The notes: a model not told the origin generated them from the sequence alone. Counted from the stretch's first letter, positions 19,594-29,952 are shown. The stretch is 55,139 bases of DNA from Salpingoeca rosetta (GCA_033442325.1 JAWQFM010000010.1:1275022-1330160); one strand, 5' to 3'. Translations and numbers: made by a program.

Positions 19594-22381
19594 TGTGTGT
19601 GTGTGACCGCACCTTGTTGAGGCGGACGGAGAAGTTGCGCTGGCCGCTCAGCAGCAGCAGCGTGTACACGCAGATGTGCACCAGCCCAATTTGGCCTTGG
19701 CGCGTTCAGACACAACGCACATGGAAGGATGAGAGGCAGCATAGGGCAAATTGATGAATGACAACAGAGTTTGCGAGACTGATCAGATTACATTACATGG
19801 TAGACGCGATGGAAACAGCCAACCTCAACAGCATACATTGGTACATGAACCGTGCAGCTGCTATCAACACACCCACACACACCACAGTCCATTGGTCTCC
19901 ACGCAGGCATGCACACACACACACACACCTGGCACGTCTTTGTTGTCGTTGAGCCGGTAGAGAACAGGCAGCAGCACATCGAGCACCTGAAAGGAGGAGG
20001 AGACAAGGAATATGCGCGCGCGCGTGTGTGTGTGTGTGTGTGTGCGTGTGTGTGTGTGCGTGTGTGCGTGTTGGCGTTAAGTGGGACGGTCGCACATGGC
20101 CATCGCTGCTGTCAGTGTCGGCATCACATCATGGTGGTGATGGTGGTGGTGAATTGCCGACCTTGCCGGTGCGGAGGATGCGAGACACAAAGGCCTTGTT
20201 GGTTTCGCAGATGCGCCAGAACAGAGTGATCAGCTCTGCAGCCACAACATGTACATTGCATGCGGTGAGTGGTTGTGGCTCGCAGGAACTCAATTGTATG
20301 TTTCATACACACACAGCTTCAACACATGCCGATCATCGTCACACAATCCTTCCCGACACACACGCACGCACACACACACATACACACGCACACACATACA
20401 TACACACACACACCGTGGTGCATATCGACGGCCTTGAAGGAGGCGGGGAGATATGAGCCCTGCAGGGGATTGTTGAGCAGACGGGCGATGTTGTCCGCCA
20501 CAAAATCAAAGTCCTCCTCGCTCTAGTTACGATGCAACACACGAACGAAGAAAACGTAAAGCGTGTGATGTGAGGGGTCAGGAAACCATGGAAGCAACGG
20601 CAAGACACAGGTAGTGTTAACATAATGTTCCCTGTCGATCACGTGAACTACAGAGACGGCACTGCCAAGTTGTCACGCTGCTGCCATCACCACCCACGAT
20701 ACCACCACGCGCATCACAACAACCATCACAATTACACCCGACCACCACCACCACCACCACCACCACCATGGCGACTGTGCACCTTGAGGGAGGCGATCCA
20801 GTCGATGAAGACGTTGCTGCCGTGCGGGGCGCCCTCGGGATCAGACGGCTGCGGATATGGCACAAAGTCGAGCAGCAGACACAGCACCTCCCCGCTCAGC
20901 TGGACACACACGCACGCACACACACACACACATGCACGCACACACACACACATGAGAGGGGACAAGGGGTAATGTGAGAGGAAGAGGTGGTGATATTGCT
21001 TGGGATGCGAACACCAGCACATGCACACGAGTGGTGTGGATGCACGAAAACAAAAACAAACAAAACAAAACAAACAACAAACAAACAAGCAGACACGAAT
21101 GCTCAATCACCTGTGCAAGCTTGTCGCGGTCGTCGTCCGGCATCATGACGTAATTGTAGGGCAAGCCGTAGCCAATTGGATCGTACGAGCACAGCGCATT
21201 CAGCAGCGAGCGCACAATCACAAGCGTGTTGCGGTGCGACCCGCCTGTGACACACGGCACACACACACACGCGAAAACACACACACACACAAGTCGAATA
21301 AATGAGACAGCAGCAAGGCTTGAAGTGGTCGCCTGAGAAAACATCACCCACGCCCACCCCAGGCGCAATCCCCTGCCAGTCAACATTCAAAACAAGCACC
21401 ATCCAACAAACAACATTCAACATACAACGTTCAACGTTCAACGTCAGCGGACCTGCGACAAAGGTGAGCCAGGGGTCGGCACGCACATCCAGGCTGTGGT
21501 GGTGGTGATACAGCGGGCGGGAGAAGCACGCCAGCAGCAGACGCAGCAGATCGCACCGCCGCTGCACAAACTTGGGCCGCTCTGCCGACGCTGCCTTCGC
21601 CTCAACGCCCGTGTACCTGATACGCCGTAGTGGGAATTGGGGGGGGGGGCGTAACGGTGATGTCAGCGAGAGTGAGTATGTGCATGTGTGTGTGTGTGTG
21701 TGTGGTTGTCCTAAAAACGCGCTATTCATGTGCTGTTCATGCATGGTTATTCACCGTGGAGCAGACACAACCACCACCACCACCAGCAGCGCATGCGAGC
21801 GGGCATGTGGTGTGCAGCACCAGGTGAGGTCGAGGGCGTGGATGGCGGCGAGTGGACGGCAGGCGACAGGATATGTTGAGCCAAACGACAGCGACCGCTG
21901 TTGCGCATGGGGAAGTGGGAGATGTGCACGTGAGATGAGCACATGGACGCGCGTGGGAGACGCGAATAAGTACATTTGTTGAAGCAAAACGGGGGGGGGG
22001 AGCATCACCACACGCACGCACGCACGCACACACGCACGCACACGCACACGCACACGCACACACGCACACACACACGCACGCACACACACACACACGCACA
22101 CACACACACATACGCACGCACGCACACGCACGCACACACACACACGCACACACACACACACATACGCACGCACGCACACGCGCGCGCAAACACACACCAC
22201 GTTCTTGAGGACGCTGTACCCTGGTGCGAACATCAGATCCTGTTGAAGGTGATGATGTGCACACGTGTGGTGAGCATGCATGCACGCATGTACGCAATGA
22301 GTGCACGGGCATGCGTAGCAAATCAGAGCCCATACCAACCAGCAATGCCCAAAAACGAACAAGGCACGCCAACAACACATC

Positions 22382-22423
<42 letters not shown>

Positions 22424-23769
22424 ATGAAAACAGGTGTGGCTTGTGTAAACCACATGTGTGAGTGCGTGCTTGTTCGCACCAGGACGGCCATGAGGAGGGT
22501 CTCAAAGAGGGCCGGTGGCGGGTTGGTCGGCATCTCGGCCACCTCCAGGTCCGCTTGCCGCTGCAGAATTGCCTCCTGCTTCACGTTGTCGGGGCATCCT
22601 TTCACATACCCGTCCTCAATCGACCCTTCCGGCTGATGTGCGTATGCGTGCAGACGTGCAATGTGGGCATCATAGTGCTTTGCGTGTAAGCTCAACAGGC
22701 AGGCTCCACACCTCCAAGGACAAGAGCGCATGCGGTGGTGTTCTAACTTGTGTCACGTTTGCACGCGTACATGTGTGCATGTAAATGCACGTGACTGTGC
22801 GTGTGCAGGCACGTGAACGCTGTCAGCGCTGAGGTTGAGCGCCGTCAGAATATGGCGTACCAGAGAAACGGCGACGCCAATGGGGGTGGCGGTGAGCCAG
22901 AAGTCTTCCCACGACGGGTCCTCGAACATGATGGGAAGCACGCGGGTCAACAGCCGCACGATGTTGCCCACTGCAACGAGCAGCACGCAGAGCCGCAACG
23001 GGAGATTGGCGGTGCCACGCCTGTGAGTGCGTGCACATACGCAAACAAGTATGTGGCGCCACGACTCGTACACAACGGAGAATATACAGTGGTGCAGACA
23101 ACGTGCAGAACGTGCACATCACACCACACAAAGCACACCAGCTCATGACCTGCCACAGCCGCCGCAATTCGACCCACCTTGGACTTTTGCTTCCTGGCTT
23201 GCCACAGCGCCCTGTCGCGTGTGCGCCGCCAGCGTGACAACTGCGCGGCGAATCAGCGTTGCAAGGTTCTTGGGACACTTGGACCGCACTTCCCGCAGCG
23301 CATCAGACGTGAATGCCTTGTACAGCTGTTGCGTGAGTGTGTGTGTGTGTGTGATCGTGTGTGTGTATGTGTGTGTGATCGTGTGTGTGTGTATGTGTGT
23401 GTGTGTGTGTGTGTCGTTGCGGCACGATCGGACTCACAATTCTTCAAGCGAGCACACCAGCAAACAAGCACACAAGCAAACAAGCACACCAGCAAACAAG
23501 CAAACAAGCAAGCAAACAAGCATTTGCATTGCCATCTCCAACCCCAGCCACAACAACAACCACAACTCCAACCACAGCCAACACCACAACCGCAACTTCG
23601 ACTACAATCACACAATCACAACCACAACACGCCGAACCTCTTCGTTTGTGATGGCCTCCTCTGTGGGCCAGAACTTGGACCAGAAGGCCTCATCCTGCAT
23701 CTCAATCACATCCACGCGCGAGGACAGCTCCTGCGCCGCACCAGCCAACACGCTCGTTGCACCTCCCAT
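16335..23769 (-). CDS. HID1: HID1 (Hid-1/Ecm30 family) peripheral Golgi protein
   Basis: N-terminus MGGATS...DEAFWSKFW, then PKNLATL, RLLTRVLPIMFEDPSW, SLLNALCSYDPIGYGLPYN, LLLLSGQRNFSVRLNK, FNNLIQYQFEGNQHLVY, LPLQTIQRLL, and C-terminus FLKNGTLVGLLPVPHPIITRRY...FDTEIRLFNV. Many GT-AG introns. Confidence 0.95.
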
Positions 23770-24145
23770 GTTGATGACGATGGTGTCTTGTGTCTTCTCT
23801 CCGTTGCTGGTCTCTGCTGTTCCTTGTCTGCGTTGTCCTTTCCCTCGCTTGCTTGCTGGCTTTTCTTCGCTTTGCTTGTTCCTCTCTTTCTTCTTTGCTG
23901 CTACTCTCTCGATAGTCAAAGTTGCCTTTGTGGAGTGAATGGCAAAATTTGCCTTTGTTGGATTCCACGAGAAATTATGTGGCCGTTGCCACATCCAGCA
24001 AAGCGCACCACCACGCAAGCCAGCCATCAAATCACGGCCAGCCACACAACAACACCCAAACAAAAACCAACAGCCACCGCGCCAACGGCACCCATCCGCG
24101 CACAGCGCAAACAAACCACCAACCCACAAAACAACAACACACACG
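23770..24145. promoter_or_regulatory. Putative bidirectional promoter, HID1/ZF-MULE gene
   Basis: 376 bp between divergent ATGs. Confidence 0.55.
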
Positions 24146-24476
24146 ATGGACGAGCCACAGTCGCAGGCGGTGGAACAAAACCCTGCCCCTGCAACGCCAA
24201 CTACAACAACAACAACACCCACCACCACCGCCAACAACAACAACAACAACGGTAACGATGATGAAACGGCCGGTAGTAGCAGCGACAACCGTGATGCCAA
24301 TGCAGAAGCACCGCACACAGACGCTGTTTCGCCTGCGAGTGTACCGGCTCCGGCACCTACAACAGACACACCACTACAGGAGCCTGGCGGGCAAGATGCC
24401 ACTTCGACGTCGGTCGTGCTTGCAATCCCGGAATCAACTGTGCGCGCAGCAGCCCAACTCTTGCAACAACGCCAGC

Positions 24477-24544
<68 letters not shown>

Positions 24545-27500
24545 CCACAAGCACATCAGATCTCAGCCCCGCCTGCGTCTGCCGTCGCCTCCAGTACGAT
24601 TGCATCCTTGCCCACTCTCCCAGACATCCTGCCGCCCTTGGACATGTCTCGCAACTCCGGCCCTGCCGCCACATCCTCCTCCTCCTCCTCCTCCTCCTCC
24701 GCTGCTATCACCACGTCCTCTACTCCCTGGCTTCCGCACAATTCGGGAATGCTGAGCCGTGGGCCAACGACATCGGGCCTGCATCACATGGGTCTCGGAC
24801 ACGCAGACAACAGTGGAGGCAGCGGCACCGGCAGTAGCGGCTCGCACCGCATCCCATCCGTCTACGCCATGTCTGGCTTATCAGGAACCCAGCCCGCTCA
24901 TCTGGGGACGCAACACCCTCACCACCACATGGTACAGGACCCGTTTCACCCGTTCCTGTCCGCGCCGTCTTCATCCACCAGCGCTGGCGCCACCTTCCAG
25001 GACACGCACGCTGCCGCCCAGCAGCAGGCCATCGACCTTCCCTATGCGGCCTCCCTTCCTCAACAACAGCAGCTGTTGCTGCATCAACGCCTGCGCATGC
25101 TGCAACCCGCGCTTGACTCGCAGCTTCTGCCCGGGTTTGATATTCGCCTCCCTCCCGTCGGTTCAACAGCAGGACAAGACACCTCACACCAACAGCAACA
25201 GAAGCAGCAGCAGCAGCAACAGCAACAACAGGAACAACAGCACCTTCTTCAGCACTTGCTTCATCAGCACCAGCGTTTGTTGCAGCAGCAGCAGCAACAG
25301 CAACAAGAAGACCGAGACACCCAGCAACAAGGTGAAGGGGACGTTGAGCAAGCAACAGCAGCGGCAGCCAGTGTGTCGCGAGAAGAGCGGGACAAGGCAG
25401 AGGACACGCGCGAGAAGCAGCCGGAGAAGCAACAACCCAAGCAGCGCCAGCAGCCAGCCGGCAAGCAACGGCAAAAGCAACAGCAGGAGCAGCAGAGTGG
25501 CGACGTCCCGTCCTCGGCCGCAGCAGACAAGCAGCAGGGCAAAACCAGCGATGGCGGTGGCGGTGGTAGTGACAGTGGTGCCGCCGAGCACAGCACCGAC
25601 GATGACGGCAAAACTGCTGCTGCTGCTGCCACTGCTGCTGCTGCCACTGCTGCTGCTGCCACTACCGCTGCTGAGAGCGCGGCCAAGCCACCAAGCCTGC
25701 GCCGCAGCGCGCAGAGAAAGAAGCGAGTAACTCCAGACAAAGTGGAGCGCAAGTGCCCGGCGGAGGGGTGTAGCAAGACGTTTGACCTTGTCAAGCGGCT
25801 GAAGGAGCACATCAAAACGGAGCACGCCAACGCACGCGAGTTGCTGGAGACGCTGAAACCCGCAGCAAAGACGCACCACTGCCCGTTTTGTGCAAAGGCA
25901 TACGCCTTCAAATCGGGCCTCTTCCGGCACATCCGCGAAGTCCACCCGCACCGCGCAGACGTAAGAGCAAGGCACTCTTGTGTGCGTGTGTGTGTGTCTG
26001 TGTCTGTGGGGGGTCTGTTTCTGCGTGTGTATACGTTGTGTTGTGTCTTGTAGGCTTGCTACATTTTGAAAGTACACACCAGCGAGAGCATGTTGCAGCT
26101 GCTCATGTACGTGCTGTCACCACCGTGCATATTCAGGAGGTGATTACACCAAAGCACGATGCGCGCTTCCCCTGCTTCTTCTGCGACACGGTCCCGTTCA
26201 AGTCTGTCACCTCCTTCATTCAACACACCCGCGAGCAGCACCCAGCCCAGTTTGAGGACTCCATTGGTGGGTGTGTGTGTGTGTGTGTGAGTGTGTGTAC
26301 TCATGTGTGTGTACTCATGTGTCTTTGTGTGTGTGCACATGTGTGTATGTGTGTGTGCATATGTGTGTGCACATGTGTGTATGTATGTGTGCATACGTGT
26401 GTGTGTGTGTGTGCTTGTGGAGCTGTTAGTGCTGCATCCAACACATGATACAATGTCACTGGATGCTTCACCTCTTCCTTCAATTCCTCTTCACTCGCCT
26501 CCTCTTTCCCCATCCCTTTCGCGACCACCAGACTACACTGTGCGCTATTTCCCTTCGATGGACGCGTTTTCGGACTGGCTGCGCCACGAACAAGACACGA
26601 CGTACACGGAGTATCTCCTGCGGTACAACCACACCACAGACTCCTACCAGACCTGGGGTGAGTCTCCTTTTGCGTCTGCCTGCTTATGCCCATGTGACAT
26701 GAAGCGCTAACAACACACGCATGTGTCTGGCGTATCCCCGCATCCACACGCGTTCACACACACGCACACACACTCTCTCCCCCCTCTCTTAATCTCACCC
26801 TCACACACAAACACACACACAAACACACACAAACACACAACGCATCAACAGACAATCAGCGTGTCAAGGTTGTTGGGCGGCGGTATCGCGTGTGTGCACG
26901 CAACCGCCCCGCTCCCTCACAAACGCGCAACAAACGCCCGCGGCGCAAGAAGCTGCCCAAGGGCGTCGGTATGTGCCTTGCGCGCATGTGGATCGACATT
27001 GCAGACGACAAGCGCGTGCGTGTGCGCTTTCTGCGCAACCACAGCCACAAGTGCACGCCCGAGCACACGTCCATCCCCAAGAACCTGCGTGACTTCATCG
27101 CCACGCAGATTGCCGCGTGCATCCCACCCGTGAAGGTCCTCAACAACCTGCGGTCGGCGTTTGCGGGCACGGAGCGTGCAGCTCTCATCACGCTGCAGGA
27201 CATCAACAACATAGCTCGCACGTGTGTGCGTGCACAGCTTGACCACGACGACTCGCAGTCGCTGATGCAACGCCTGCACGACCTTGCACACCACGACCCT
27301 GGCGCAATCGTGAGCCTGAAGGCGCCTGGCGAGCCCGCATTCCGCACGTTTCCATCTGTTCAGGGCATGCCCGTCACCGCCGACTTTGCCGCTGAAGATT
27401 TCGTCCTTGTTCTTCAGACGGCTTTCCAGAAGCAGCTCATGAAGGTGTGAGTGTGTGGGTGTGTGGGTGTGAGTATCTGCGTTTGTGGGAGGGAAAGCGC

Positions 27501-29952
27501 TTGCTGCGTATGCTTTTGGGTGTGTGGGTGTCAAAGTGTTTATTCATCCCCCCCCCCCCTTCTCCGTAGCGTTTGAAGTTCAAAACACGAAGCCACGTTT
27601 TCTCTGCCTCACTCTCCCAAATTCAACCAACAACAACACTGCCCTTTCATGTCATGCAGGAGTGTGGGTCGCGCGGGGTGTTCCTTGCTGTTACGGCGCA
27701 GAACAACAAGTACCACTACCCGACAATGACGCTCGTTGGTGAGAGCCCTGCCGGCAATGCAGTGGCGCTGGCACACTGCATCTCCAACAAGAAGACGGCA
27801 AGCACAACCCGCCTCTTCTTCGCCAGCACCACCGTGCCACTCGGTGTCAGGCCGCACACATACCTCTTCATGAACGAGCAGACGGATGCCGCGGATTTTG
27901 AAATTGCGCGCGAGACCTGGGGCGCGTCTGTGAGGCCGCTTCTCTGCACGTGGGCACACGGCGATATCTGGTGCGCCTTTCTTGCTCGTTGGCACGTTTT
28001 CTTGCTTGCTTGTGTGCGTGCGTGTGTGCGTGTGTTTTGTGCTCGCGTGATGGAAATGTTGGTCAGATTTCTGAAACAAATCTCCAAGTCCATACACTAA
28101 AACCCTGTCACCTCCCCCCTTCTCTCTCTCTCTCTCTCTCTCCACTTGCTCCCCTGTTTGTTCGTTTCTCTCAACCCGCATGTGCGTGTGTATGCGTGTG
28201 TGCGTGTGTATGCGTGTGTGCGTGTTGCTCCGCAGGCAAACAGAGGCCACTGCTCGGGCGAGCACGCCTCACCAAGGCCGCAAGGCGTTCAAGGCACTTG
28301 TGCATCTTCTTCGCGCACAGAACCCGCAGGCGTTTGAGGCGTCATGGGATGGGTTTTGCCGGCTGTGGAAGCCAACGGAGCCCGACCTGGTGGAATGGGC
28401 GAGTGAACACATGTACGAGAAGCGGACGCTGTGGGCCCGCGCTTTTCGCGAACCGAGCGACCCCTCCACCGAGAACATCCTCAGCGTGAGTGGCAGGAAC
28501 ACTGTGTGTGCGTGCATGTCTGTGCGCGCGCGCGCGTTTGTGTGTGTCTGTGTGTCTGTGTCTGTGTGTCTGTGTGCGCGCGCGTTTGTGTGTGTCTGTG
28601 TTTGGGAGGCAGCTCGTCTGGAGATTCTTACCCCATCGTTTTGCTGATTGCTCACAACCAGTTGCTCTCCTCGTTTCCACCACCAACATCATCACCAACA
28701 TCATCACCATTGCAGGAGTACCAGGCTGCTGTGCGCGAGACGGCGGTGTGCGATACGGCCGCGGCCTCCCTGGAGCAGCAGGTGGAGAGTCTGTTCAAGC
28801 TGGACACGTGGCAGCAGAACCTTGCCAACCGCGTTCGTGAGGAAGGTGACAGCGTGGTGTTGGCGCTCAAGGCCGCGCAGGCCATTCGCGAAGGAAAGGT
28901 CATCAGCCCCCTCAACATCGAGCAGGCAGGCCCGGCACTCTTCAAGGTGTGGTGTGTGTGTGCGTGTGCGCTAGTCACCTTAACAACAAACAAACTGGGT
29001 CGGAACGTCGCATCACCTTGTTTGCAAAGCATAGCTCTCGCCTCTCCATAACTGTCTCTTTCCCTCTTCCGCCTTACATGGCCTCACACGCACGCGTACA
29101 TTCACGCTCATCTTTTTTTTTTTCAAGGTGAAACACGATCAGTCGAACACGACGGTGCACACGGTGACACGCCAGGCCGTGCCGACCTGCATGCACTGTC
29201 GCGTTCTTCCGTGCATCCACGTCTTTGACTGCACGTGCTTTGACTTTGCCGTCAGCAACACTGGCGTGTGTCAGCACACGGGCGCCGTGTATTCGCTCAT
29301 GGTTGAGCGGACCGATGCAGGCAGGAAGAAGCGACGCGCCAAGCAGGACAAGGACACCCAGGCCCAGTCGCAGCAGACAGGCGAGGGCCCACAGGCCCCT
29401 GATACTGCTGCGACAACTGCTGCGAGTGATTCAGCGAGTGATGGGACCCCGGCTCATCCACCACCACCCCTGATGACGCCACAGCCGCAAGGGCAGCCTG
29501 CACAGAGCCCTGCCGTTCAGGGCCAGCACGTGCCGCAGCCGCACTCACAAGCACAAACGCCCACACGCAGCGAGAACGACAGCGGTGCTGGCGTTGGCGG
29601 GGACAGTGGCGTGCAGGAGTCACAGCCACAGCCAGGGCCACAACCTCTGCCACAACAGCAACCGACCCAAGCCCACAAGCAGCAGCAGGAACGGCAGCAG
29701 CAGCAGCAGAGCCAAAGTGAAAAGCAGGGAGGAGAACAAGCGACTGCTGCGAGCACTGCTGGTGCCGAGGGCAACACGAGCGGCAGTGACAGCGGGCACA
29801 GCAACGAAGCAATTGGCGCGGCCGGTGCCACCGTAGCCACGTCGCCTCAGCAGCCAGTCAATGTCGTGGTGGACGAAGCACATGCTAGCACGGAGACTGG
29901 CACGGAGACTGGGGAGCCGCCAGCCAAGCGCGCGCACACCACCACCGAGTGA
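24146..29952 (+). CDS. Q-rich, 3x C2H2 zinc finger + WRKY/GCM1-like finger + degenerate MULE (Mutator) transposase core + SWIM finger protein; probably a domesticated transposase
   Basis: Eight phase-compatible exons at about 24146-25960, 26137-26266, 26532-26657, 26852-27444, 27660-27970, 28236-28485, 28716-28947 and 29128-29952. C2H2 fingers CPAEGC..H..H, CPFC..H..H and CFFC..H..H. YRVCAR...CLARM...HSH finger. MULE-like blocks FVLVLQTAFQKQLM, LLCTW and WARAFR. SWIM-type CTC...CQH. Confidence 0.8.

What the first reader, a model, noticed from the sequence alone, without database searches (positions are those of the whole stretch)
24146..29952. Domesticated, apparently catalytically dead Mutator (MULE) transposase fused to a Q-rich region and C2H2 zinc fingers
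Seen: after splicing, the protein has the full MULE domain order of WRKY/GCM1-type finger (YRVCAR...CLARM...HSH), RNase-H-like core and SWIM finger (CTCFDFAVSNTGVCQH). By eye, every catalytic position is altered. The first Asp (consensus like CxDxTH) reads FLAVTA, the second Asp (FMSD) reads FMNE, the CxWH signature reads CTWA, and TNxxxE reads TENILS. The zinc-binding modules and reading frame are intact across 7 canonical introns. No terminal inverted repeats are evident, and the gene sits 376 bp head-to-head with HID1. Known: plant FHY3/FAR1 and MUSTANG genes and yeast Aft1 are host regulators derived from MULEs. Inference: this is an independent domestication into a transcription factor in a unicellular relative of animals, with the ~530-aa Q/S-rich N-terminus as an activation domain.
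Basis: partly seen in the sequence, partly recalled or inferred. Interest (0 to 1): 0.82.

Follow-up and report, generated by a model that had tools for sequence, protein, structure and literature searches.

The report
Domesticated dead Mutator transposase gene
This single-copy, expressed gene of the choanoflagellate Salpingoeca rosetta (PTSG_04039) descends from a Mutator-like transposase, keeps its zinc-finger DNA-binding parts but has lost the cutting residues, so it is a new but not unprecedented case of a host gene made from a transposon.

Summary
Window 24146-29952 (+) is PTSG_04039 of Salpingoeca rosetta, annotated only as a hypothetical C2H2 protein. Eight exons joined by GT-AG introns give one open frame of about 1,300-1,450 aa. 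Domain order is three C2H2 fingers, a WRKY-like finger, an RNase-H-like core and a SWIM motif.

Pfam does not recognise the protein. It is nevertheless collinear with MULE-domain proteins and with the active SrosM transposon of the same genome (28-bp TIRs, 9-bp TSD). Its predicted core matches the IS256-family ISCth4 transposase best (Z 10.2).

At the canonical catalytic positions it has A, N and S in place of D, D and E, and A in place of the CxxH histidine.

It is single copy and has no TIRs. Published RNA-seq gives 3.7-22 FPKM. A reciprocal-best orthologue on a Tara Oceans scaffold shares five intron positions and also lacks both Asp residues.

- The C2H2 fingers are not a new fusion. SrosM, an intact relative and animal MULEs all carry them.
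- The introns are inherited from the transposon.

A transcription-factor role is plausible but untested. Verdict: a new member of a known kind, of moderate interest. Other first-reader notes in this scan flagged SrosM and DDE-less paralogues elsewhere in this genome.

The parts
24146..25960 (+). Exon 1. It encodes a Q/S/A-rich low-complexity region followed by C2H2 fingers 1 and 2. The 5' end is uncertain: the public model uses ATG 24300 plus an extra intron of about 24408-24622 across the CAG repeat.
   Evidence: The frame is open from 24002 to 26050. Models were compared. The donor GTAAGA lies at 25961.
25754..25825 (+). C2H2 finger 1 (CPAEGC...HIKTEH; Cx4Cx12Hx4H).
   Evidence: Position. 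The AlphaFold model shows a beta-beta-alpha unit here. It is homologous to SrosM ECPASGC...HICTSH and to L028.
25880..25945 (+). C2H2 finger 2 (CPFC...HIREVH).
   Evidence: Pfam zf-C2H2 gives E 0.046, below the cut-off. AlphaFold shows a beta-beta-alpha unit. Foldseek matches C2H2 arrays.
26137..26266 (+). Exon 2, with C2H2-like finger 3 at 26173-26241 (CFFC...HTREQH). It is 67% identical to the Tara orthologue.
26532..26657 (+). Exon 3, the N-terminal part of the WRKY/GCM1-like domain.
   Evidence: It is 60% identical to the Tara orthologue. The junctions match P0001.
26852..27444 (+). Exon 4. It holds the WRKY-like zinc module (YRVCAR...MCLARM...NHSHKC, to about 27060), a basic KRPRRKK patch and a helical linker.
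   Evidence: H631 and H633 are nearly invariant in 32 relatives. AtWRKY18 is a fold match. The exon is 51-53% identical to the orthologue.
27660..27970 (+). Exon 5, the RNase-H-like core. Ala775 (27687-27689) replaces Asp 1. Asn837 (27873-27875) replaces Asp 2. CTWAH (27945-27959) replaces CxxH.
   Evidence: Alignment. In the model, Ala775 lies on strand 1, Asn837 in the loop just after strand 4, and the CTWAH motif at the end of strand 5. ISCth4 is the best fold match.
28236..28485 (+). Exon 6, the helical insertion. It ends in STENILS, with Ser952 (28483-28485) at the catalytic Glu position.
   Evidence: SrosM ends the homologous exon in TTNNYIE, with an intron at the same position.
28716..28946 (+). 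Exon 7, a helical region. It is the least conserved part (22% identity to the orthologue).
29128..29952 (+). Exon 8. It holds the SWIM motif CxCx10CxH at 29230-29277, a basic RKKRR patch and a Q/P/A-rich tail up to the stop codon.
   Evidence: InterPro SWIM (IPR007527) is listed for this gene in the supplement of PMC4054682.
26317..26409.
20844..23776 (-). The 5' exons of the divergently transcribed neighbour HID1.
   Evidence: Pfam Hid1 hits. An MGGATSV... start lies in the minus-strand frame ending near 23770.

Best explanation
PTSG_04039 is a host gene exapted from a Mutator-like (MULE) transposase. Its source lineage is the choanoflagellate lineage that also gave rise to the active SrosM transposon.

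The ancestral transposase already had three N-terminal C2H2 fingers, a WRKY/GCM1-like finger, an IS256/Mutator-type RNase-H core, a SWIM finger and spliceosomal introns. In this copy the terminal repeats are gone. The catalytic Asp-Asp-Glu residues and the CxxH histidine are replaced at their canonical positions.

The change happened before S. rosetta and an uncultured marine relative diverged, because both lack the two Asp residues. The zinc-binding modules stayed under the strongest constraint. The protein can therefore no longer cut DNA.

It most likely acts as a sequence-specific DNA-binding regulator. The dead core and SWIM region would serve as a scaffold or dimerisation surface, and the low-complexity tails as effector regions, as in plant FHY3/FAR1.

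Shown here: the descent, the loss of the catalytic residues, single-copy status, conservation and expression. Inferred: DNA binding, nuclear location and the regulatory role.
For: **Descent from a MULE.**
- Exon-by-exon collinear matches (26-37% identity) link the gene to a multicopy family.
- That family's core exon hits Pfam MULE at 1e-12, and it keeps FLDSTH, ITDKT, LCQFH and TTNNYIE.
- The family has 28-bp TIRs, a sharp common end in four copies and a 9-bp TSD. It equals SrosM of PMC6875170.
- phmmer of residues 380-1100 aligns end to end with MULE-domain proteins: P0031 at 5e-34, P0009 at 3e-30 and P0018 at 1e-24.
- The predicted fold matches ISCth4 best (Foldseek E 1e-4; VIA Z 10.2, 214 residues). 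The next best match scores Z 6.3.

**Loss of catalysis.** The alignment is. The residues fall at the expected structural positions.

**Host-gene status.**
- There is one 100% locus in the 55.4-Mb genome; the next best match is 31% identical or less.
- There are no TIRs and no flank inverted repeats.
- The Tara scaffold L017 is a reciprocal best hit (53% identity, 203 bits, against 43 bits for the next).
- L017 shares five intron positions and has Ala and Gly at the two Asp sites.
- The frame is intact over about 600 codons although dS is 1.1-2.3. Amino-acid identity is 67-68% in the C2H2 and WRKY modules, 53% in SWIM and 35% in the core.
- The gene and L017 form a clade with 100/99 support.

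**Expression.** FPKM is 3.7-22.4 in eight samples. It is highest in solitary swimmers, with log2 fold change 1.9 against attached cells (P 1.2e-7).
Against: - Pfam finds no MULE, FAR1 or SWIM family in the full protein. Membership therefore rests on transitive homology and a predicted fold.
- Only one orthologous lineage was found. It comes from an unidentified organism on a 4.3-kb scaffold, so its copy number and genomic context are unknown.
- dS is saturated, so omega (0.19-0.73) is not reliable.
- An Asp, a His and a Glu lie 4, 1 and 1 residues from the canonical second Asp, CxxH and Glu positions.
- No read-level evidence for the splice junctions could be obtained.
- Nothing here shows DNA binding, nuclear location or any target gene.
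Confidence: 0.72

Rival explanations
1. The protein is a transposon regulator rather than a general transcription factor. In this reading a dead transposase derivative binds SrosM ends or the SrosM transposase and tunes or represses the active element of the same genome.
For: SrosM is young, has about 23 copies and is highly expressed in the same genome. The two proteins share the whole set of DNA-binding and multimerisation modules.
Against: The WRKY-like and C2H2 modules are only 26-35% identical to those of SrosM, so shared target sites are unlikely. The gene lineage is much older than the present SrosM copies, which are 94-99% identical to each other. No SrosM-type TIR lies near the gene.
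Confidence: 0.13
2. The locus is a fossil of an immobilised MULE copy with no host function. It would merely happen to be transcribed from the bidirectional HID1 promoter region.
For: Pfam no longer recognises the core. The middle exons are weakly conserved, at 22-35% identity. Another DDE-less paralogue in the genome (L007) shows that such copies arise repeatedly.
Against: A frame of 1,300 codons or more is open across eight exons here, and about 700 codons are open in the orthologue, despite saturated synonymous divergence. The zinc ligands are all intact and 53-68% conserved. Five intron positions are conserved. Expression differs between cell types.
Confidence: 0.07
3. The protein is still an active nuclease or recombinase. 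It would use displaced acidic residues (Asp841, Glu953) and His865.
For: Like residues lie 1-4 positions from three of the four canonical sites, and MAFFT can place Asp841 in the second-Asp column. The RNase-H fold is predicted with fair confidence.
Against: The first Asp is Ala in both orthologues, with no nearby acidic residue. The nearby Asp is not at a conserved position between the two orthologues, and the orthologue has no Cys or His of the CxxH motif. The gene is single copy and has no TIRs.
Confidence: 0.03

Closest known systems
SrosM, the MULE-like DNA transposon of Salpingoeca rosetta (Southworth et al. 2019, PMC6875170)
   Same: It has the same domain order: three C2H2 fingers, a WRKY-like finger, an RNase-H core and a SWIM finger. 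It has introns at two or more identical positions and sits in the same strongly supported clade.
   Different: SrosM has 28-bp TIRs, a 9-bp TSD, about 23 young copies and intact D, D, CxxH and E motifs. PTSG_04039 is single copy, has no TIRs, lacks those residues and is only 26-37% identical.
Plant FHY3/FAR1/FRS and MUSTANG genes (MULE-derived regulators)
   Same: They are host genes derived from a MULE transposase. They keep an N-terminal WRKY/GCM1-type finger, a transposase core and a SWIM finger, and they act (FHY3/FAR1) as transcription factors. That is established knowledge (see PMC13306707, listed).
   Different: PTSG_04039 has no Pfam FAR1 or MULE hit. It carries three extra C2H2 fingers inherited from its own transposon lineage. 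It arose in the choanoflagellate MULE clade, so the domestication is separate. Its function has not been tested.
Vertebrate ZSWIM1/ZSWIM3 (Pfam PF21056, ZSWIM1-3 RNaseH-like)
   Same: They are holozoan proteins with a MULE-type RNase-H-like domain and a SWIM finger. PF21056 hits SrosM and the animal relatives of this gene.
   Different: PF21056 does not hit PTSG_04039. No ZSWIM sequence was available to place in the tree, so the relationship is untested.
ISCth4 (IS256-family) transposase, PDB 6XGX/6XG8/6XGW
   Same: It is the best structural match to the predicted core (Z 10.2, 214 aligned residues). IS256 is the prokaryotic counterpart of eukaryotic Mutator; that statement is from my own knowledge.
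   Different: It is bacterial, catalytically active and 6-12% identical. It has no C2H2, WRKY-like or SWIM modules.

Membership tests
MULE / Mutator-superfamily transposase | Pfam PF10551 (MULE domain) above the gathering score | tested here: not met
   No family at E <= 0.1 in the full-length P0001, and none in the separate exons.
MULE / Mutator-superfamily transposase | Collinear sequence homology to proteins that carry the MULE domain | tested here: met
   phmmer of residues 380-1100 gives 5e-34, 3e-30 and 1e-24 against P0031, P0009 and P0018 over about 520-670 residues. These proteins hit PF10551 at 5e-11, 5e-12 and 7e-5; the P0018 hit (23.7 bits) is below the gathering score. SrosM exons match collinearly, and the SrosM core hits PF10551 at 1e-12.
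MULE / Mutator-superfamily transposase | RNase-H-like fold of the IS256/Mutator type | tested here: met
   The AlphaFold model has pLDDT 76.6 and beta1-3/alpha/beta4/alpha/beta5 topology. ISCth4 is the best match by Foldseek (E 1e-4) and by VIA (Z 10.2). This is a predicted model built on a 17-row alignment.
MULE / Mutator-superfamily transposase | Catalytic DDE triad and C/DxxH motif | tested here: not met
   Ala775, Asn837, Ser952 and CTWAH stand at the canonical positions. The orthologue has Ala and Gly, no CxxH, and keeps the Glu.
MULE / Mutator-superfamily transposase | Terminal inverted repeats, a 9-11-bp TSD and multiple copies | tested here: not met
   No SrosM TIR lies in the window, and the best flank inverted repeat is 21 bp at E 0.06. 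There is one locus in the genome.
Domesticated (exapted) transposase gene | Single-copy orthologue in another species with the frame maintained | tested here: met
   L017 is a reciprocal best hit. About 700 codons are open, five intron positions are shared and the clade has 100/99 support. Only one other lineage was found, and its copy number is unknown.
Domesticated (exapted) transposase gene | dN/dS significantly below 1 | tested here: inconclusive
   NG86 omega is 0.19-0.73 by region and 0.34 overall, but dS is 1.1-2.3 and therefore saturated. YN00 failed for most regions.
Domesticated (exapted) transposase gene | Expression | tested here: met
   FPKM is 3.7-22.4 in all eight samples of PMC4054682, Additional files 7 and 12. 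No reads were laid here.
FHY3/FAR1 family | FAR1 DNA-binding domain (Pfam PF03101) | tested here: not met
   No hit at E <= 0.1. The domain is WRKY-like by predicted fold only.
SWIM zinc finger | CxCxnCxH signature; Pfam PF04434 | tested here: inconclusive
   CxCx10CxH is present. It is conserved in the orthologue, in SrosM and in four of the six animal or metagenome relatives aligned; the other two do not cover this region. There is no Pfam hit. InterPro IPR007527 is listed for this gene in PMC4054682.
C2H2 zinc finger | Cx2-4Cx12-13Hx3-5H with a beta-beta-alpha fold | tested here: met
   There are three units with complete ligands. AlphaFold predicts beta-beta-alpha for each. Foldseek matches CTCF, Klf4 and Zif268 at prob 0.85-0.97. 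Pfam is below its cut-off at E 0.046.
Sequence-specific transcription factor | DNA binding, nuclear location and an effect on target transcription | not testable with these tools
   There is only indirect support: the zinc modules are the most conserved parts, and the basic patches KRPRRKK and RKKRR are conserved in the orthologue.

The most novel reading that the evidence does not exclude
PTSG_04039 may be an old, choanoflagellate-wide regulator built from a C2H2-bearing MULE transposase. It would be a holozoan-protist counterpart of plant FHY3/FAR1 that arose independently. Its three-fold higher expression in solitary swimmers than in attached cells would reflect a role in switching between S. 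rosetta cell types.
Probability: 0.25. Interest if true: 0.7.

Novelty: new member of a known kind. Interest (0 to 1): 0.52.

Why it matters
Host regulators derived from transposases are well documented in plants, fungi and vertebrates. They are hardly documented in the unicellular relatives of animals.

Here the dead derivative sits in the same genome as a living element of its own transposon clade, SrosM. An orthologue from a second species is also available. The steps of exaptation can therefore be read directly:
- loss of the ends;
- loss of the catalytic residues;
- retention of every zinc module.

S. rosetta can be edited with CRISPR, so the function can be tested. The case also shows that the C2H2-WRKY-core-SWIM layout belongs to a MULE clade that includes animal proteins and the choanoflagellate elements. 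This matters for annotating the many 'C2H2-type domain-containing' proteins of invertebrates.

Tried and rejected
**Steps that failed or found nothing.**
There is therefore no read-level splice or strand evidence.
- Those places were sent to no search tool afterwards. A local splice-site script did read through them and printed short translated candidates. One search masked them.
- A second run search with an intron-7 probe was meant to separate DNA holders from RNA holders. It was inconclusive: X6 holds 0.88 of the intron words, and the other candidate RNA rows were not listed.
- Pfam on the eight separate exons and on the full protein gave no MULE, FAR1 or SWIM family.
- The search for homologous proteins on residues 500-1095 found only the protein itself.
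- A profile search of PDB sequences found nothing meaningful.
- Two metagenome scans, with exon 4 and with the SWIM region, found no further orthologue.
- YN00 dN/dS failed for most regions because of saturation.

**Ideas rejected.**
- My first choice of intron-1 acceptor (26082 or 26053). I now prefer the annotated acceptor at 26136, which is matched by a conserved CAG in the orthologue.
- The C2H2 array as a post-domestication fusion.
- A single domestication shared with the second DDE-less paralogue L007. L007 groups with an intact element (95/92).

Full report
**Identity of the locus**

The window lies on contig C10 of a 55.4-Mb genome. The gene's exon 4 matches a public protein at 100% identity. 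That protein is P0001, 1,303 aa, XP_004994936.1 / EGD83432.1, UniProt F2U7L5. It is named 'hypothetical protein PTSG_04039 [Salpingoeca rosetta]' or 'C2H2-type domain-containing protein'. No paper in the searchable library names the gene.

**Gene model**

Starting from the open frames, I built a spliced model with seven GT-AG introns. It gives an uninterrupted frame of 1,444 codons from ATG 24146 to the stop at 29950-29952.

Junctions 2 to 7 are identical to those of P0001. The exons from exon 2 onward are:
- 26137-26266
- 26532-26657
- 26852-27444
- 27660-27970
- 28236-28485
- 28716-28946
- 29128-29952

The public model differs in three ways. It uses an acceptor at 26136 for intron 1; I accept this because the orthologue has a CAG at the same place. 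It uses a start at 24300 in another frame. It adds an extra intron that removes the CAG repeat.

No read evidence could be obtained, and I worked around those places afterwards.

**Is it derived from a MULE?**

Pfam says nothing. There is no MULE, FAR1 or SWIM family at E <= 0.1, neither on the separate exons nor on the full protein. Homology is nevertheless clear through intermediates.

1. *The resident multicopy family.* Six-frame searches of the genome with exons 4 and 5 find one 100% locus and a set of loci at 22-45% identity. These are collinear with the WRKY-like region, the core, the middle exon and the SWIM region.
   - The core exon of that family hits PF10551 (MULE) at 1e-12 and PF21056 at 2e-10.
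   - The copies are 94-99% identical to each other and end at a sharp common 3' terminus.
   - They carry a perfect 28-bp TIR, and one copy is flanked by a 9-bp TSD with one mismatch.
   - This is SrosM of Southworth et al. 2019: 8,326 bp, 28-bp ITR, 9-bp TSD, 23 copies, 19,480 reads, only young copies, and a transposase gene with introns (PMC6875170).
2. *Proteins from other organisms.* A phmmer search of 1.84 billion representatives with exon 4 returned 31 proteins.
   - The long ones carry PF10551 and PF21056 just after the matched region.
   - With residues 380-1100 as query, they align end to end: P0031 at 5e-34, P0009 at 3e-30 and P0018 at 1e-24.
3. *Predicted structure.*
   - AlphaFold of residues 745-1095 (17-row alignment, pLDDT 76.6) gives the RNase-H strand-helix order. 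The best PDB match is the IS256-family ISCth4 transposase (Foldseek E 1e-4, prob 1.00; VIA-align Z 10.2, rmsd 4.9, 214 residues). Next come Hermes (Z 6.3), RAG1 (Z 6.0) and retroviral integrases.
   - AlphaFold of residues 405-765 (pLDDT 85.5) shows three beta-beta-alpha fingers, a WRKY-like sheet (AtWRKY18, prob 1.00, TMt 0.57, E 0.018) and a helical region.

**Catalytic residues**

The alignment holds the gene, its orthologue, SrosM, the paralogue L007 and six animal or metagenome MULE proteins.

| Site | Relatives | PTSG_04039 | Tara orthologue |
|---|---|---|---|
| First Asp | D in SrosM, P0031, P0009, P0018, P0006, P0005 | Ala775 | Ala |
| Second Asp | D | Asn837 in the gap-free register | Gly |
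| CxxH | CxxH in SrosM, P0031 and P0009 | CTWAH (His one residue late) | no Cys, no His |
| Glu | last residue of the exon (SrosM TTNNYIE, then the intron) | Ser952 (STENILS, then the intron), Glu at +1 | Glu kept |

- For the second Asp, an Asp lies four residues on in this gene and two residues on in the orthologue. These are not homologous positions.
- In the model, the altered residues lie where an RNase-H fold expects the catalytic ones: Ala775 on strand 1, Asn837 in the loop after strand 4, Ser952 on a later helix.
- Without the first Asp a DDE enzyme cannot work. That statement is established knowledge for the superfamily.

**Is it a host gene?**

- *Copy number and ends.* It is single copy. 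The window has no SrosM TIR even with mismatches. The flanks share only chance-level inverted repeats.
- *Orthologue.* A Tara Oceans scaffold (L017, 4,282 bp; also a second contig, L018) encodes an orthologue.
  - Per-exon identity is 66, 60, 51, 32, 35 and 31%.
  - It is a reciprocal best hit against the S. rosetta genome (203 bits against 43 for the next).
  - Five of six intron positions are shared.
  - The two form a clade with 100/99 support.
- *Selection.* Synonymous divergence is saturated (dS 1.1-2.3), so omega (0.34 overall) is only indicative. About 600 aligned codons have stayed open in both lineages.
- *Conservation by region* is graded in a telling way:

| Region | Amino-acid identity |
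|---|---|
| C2H2 and WRKY modules | 67-68% |
| SWIM | 53% |
| Dead core | 35% |
| Exon 7 | 22% |

- *Expression.* Published RNA-seq lists the gene at 6.8, 3.7 and 4.2 FPKM in thecate samples, 22.4 in swimmers, 6.6 in chain colonies and 10.2-14.8 in rosettes. Swimmer against attached gives log2 1.9, P 1.2e-7 (PMC4054682, Additional files 7 and 12).
- *Neighbour.* HID1 is confirmed as the divergent neighbour.

- *The C2H2 fingers were not added on domestication.*
  - The full-length SrosM copy on C12 encodes ECPASGC...HICTSH, CPENTC...HQLRDH and a third finger. These are 35% identical to fingers 1-2 here (E 9e-7).
  - An apparently intact relative on a Logan contig (L028: DGTH, ITDD, CVFH, TTNNIVE) has the same pair.
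  - Animal relatives carry N-terminal C2H2 fingers that align with these: krill, brittle star, sea slug, bugs and a beetle.
- *The introns are inherited too.* SrosM has introns after ...KQAW and ...NYIE, exactly where this gene has them.
- *Q-rich tracts occur in SrosM as well*. They say little about an activation domain.

**Independence of the domestication**

The tree places SrosM, the pair PTSG_04039 plus Tara orthologue, and the pair L007 plus L028 in one clade (100/100), apart from the animal proteins. The domestication is therefore separate from the plant and fungal cases. It happened inside a choanoflagellate MULE lineage. The relationship to vertebrate ZSWIM1/3 could not be tested.

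**Mechanism**

The most likely reading is a catalytically dead, MULE-derived DNA-binding regulator.
- The three C2H2 fingers and the WRKY-like finger would read DNA.
- The core and SWIM region would act as a scaffold, by analogy with FHY3/FAR1. This is inference.
- A role as a regulator of SrosM is the main functional rival.
- A neutral fossil or a still-active enzyme is unlikely.

**Novelty**

This is a new member of a known kind. Domesticated MULE transposases are known. This one is unreported, lies in a group where such genes are little described, and is experimentally tractable.

Other first-reader notes of this scan describe SrosM-type elements and DDE-less paralogues elsewhere in this genome. 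I confirmed their claims about the C2H2 array and the intact triad on my own loci.

Noticed in passing
L007 = G000:C27:613577-616810 (also L023): This is a second divergent MULE-derived locus. It has a long poly-Q insertion, an upstream C2H2 match and introns. It has Ala at the first Asp, no CxxH and no Glu (SNTTAKV), but it keeps the second Asp. Pfam MULE gives 2e-5. In the tree it groups with the intact element L028 (95/92), so its decay is independent of PTSG_04039. Whether it is a gene or a relic is open.
   Followed up: partly
G000:C12:948059-956896 and the inverted copy near C12:906700-913000: Two SrosM copies lie about 40 kb apart in inverted orientation and are 97-100% identical. The full-length copy has no matching 9-bp TSD at its two ends. 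This would fit recombination or inversion between the copies.
   Followed up: no
G000:C8:292534-299766 (te_c8): This SrosM copy of 7,233 bp lacks the 5' C2H2 exons present in the 8,838-bp C12 copy, yet it keeps both TIRs and a 9-bp TSD (ccaaacatc / ccaaagatc). It is an internally deleted but recently inserted copy.
   Followed up: partly
G000:C6:612778-613104 (-): This is a further WRKY-like match. It scores better against the Tara orthologue (42.6 bits, 28% identity) than the SrosM copies do, and it has one in-frame TGA. It may be a third old MULE-derived lineage or a pseudogene.
   Followed up: no
window 24300-24622: The public model of PTSG_04039 starts in a different frame from the long open frame (24002-26050). 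It splices out exactly the CAG repeat. This looks like a possible annotation artefact at a length-variable repeat.
   Followed up: partly
P0005 (Meganyctiphanes norvegica CAL4078084.1): This krill protein contains two tandem copies of the whole WRKY-like plus MULE unit. The two copies are almost identical (tree branch lengths 0.09 and 0.12).
   Followed up: no
PMC4054682, Additional file 12: The file is captioned 'upregulated in thecate cells', but its column heads compare Swim with Attach and Colony. The values for PTSG_04039 show it highest in swimmers.
   Followed up: partly
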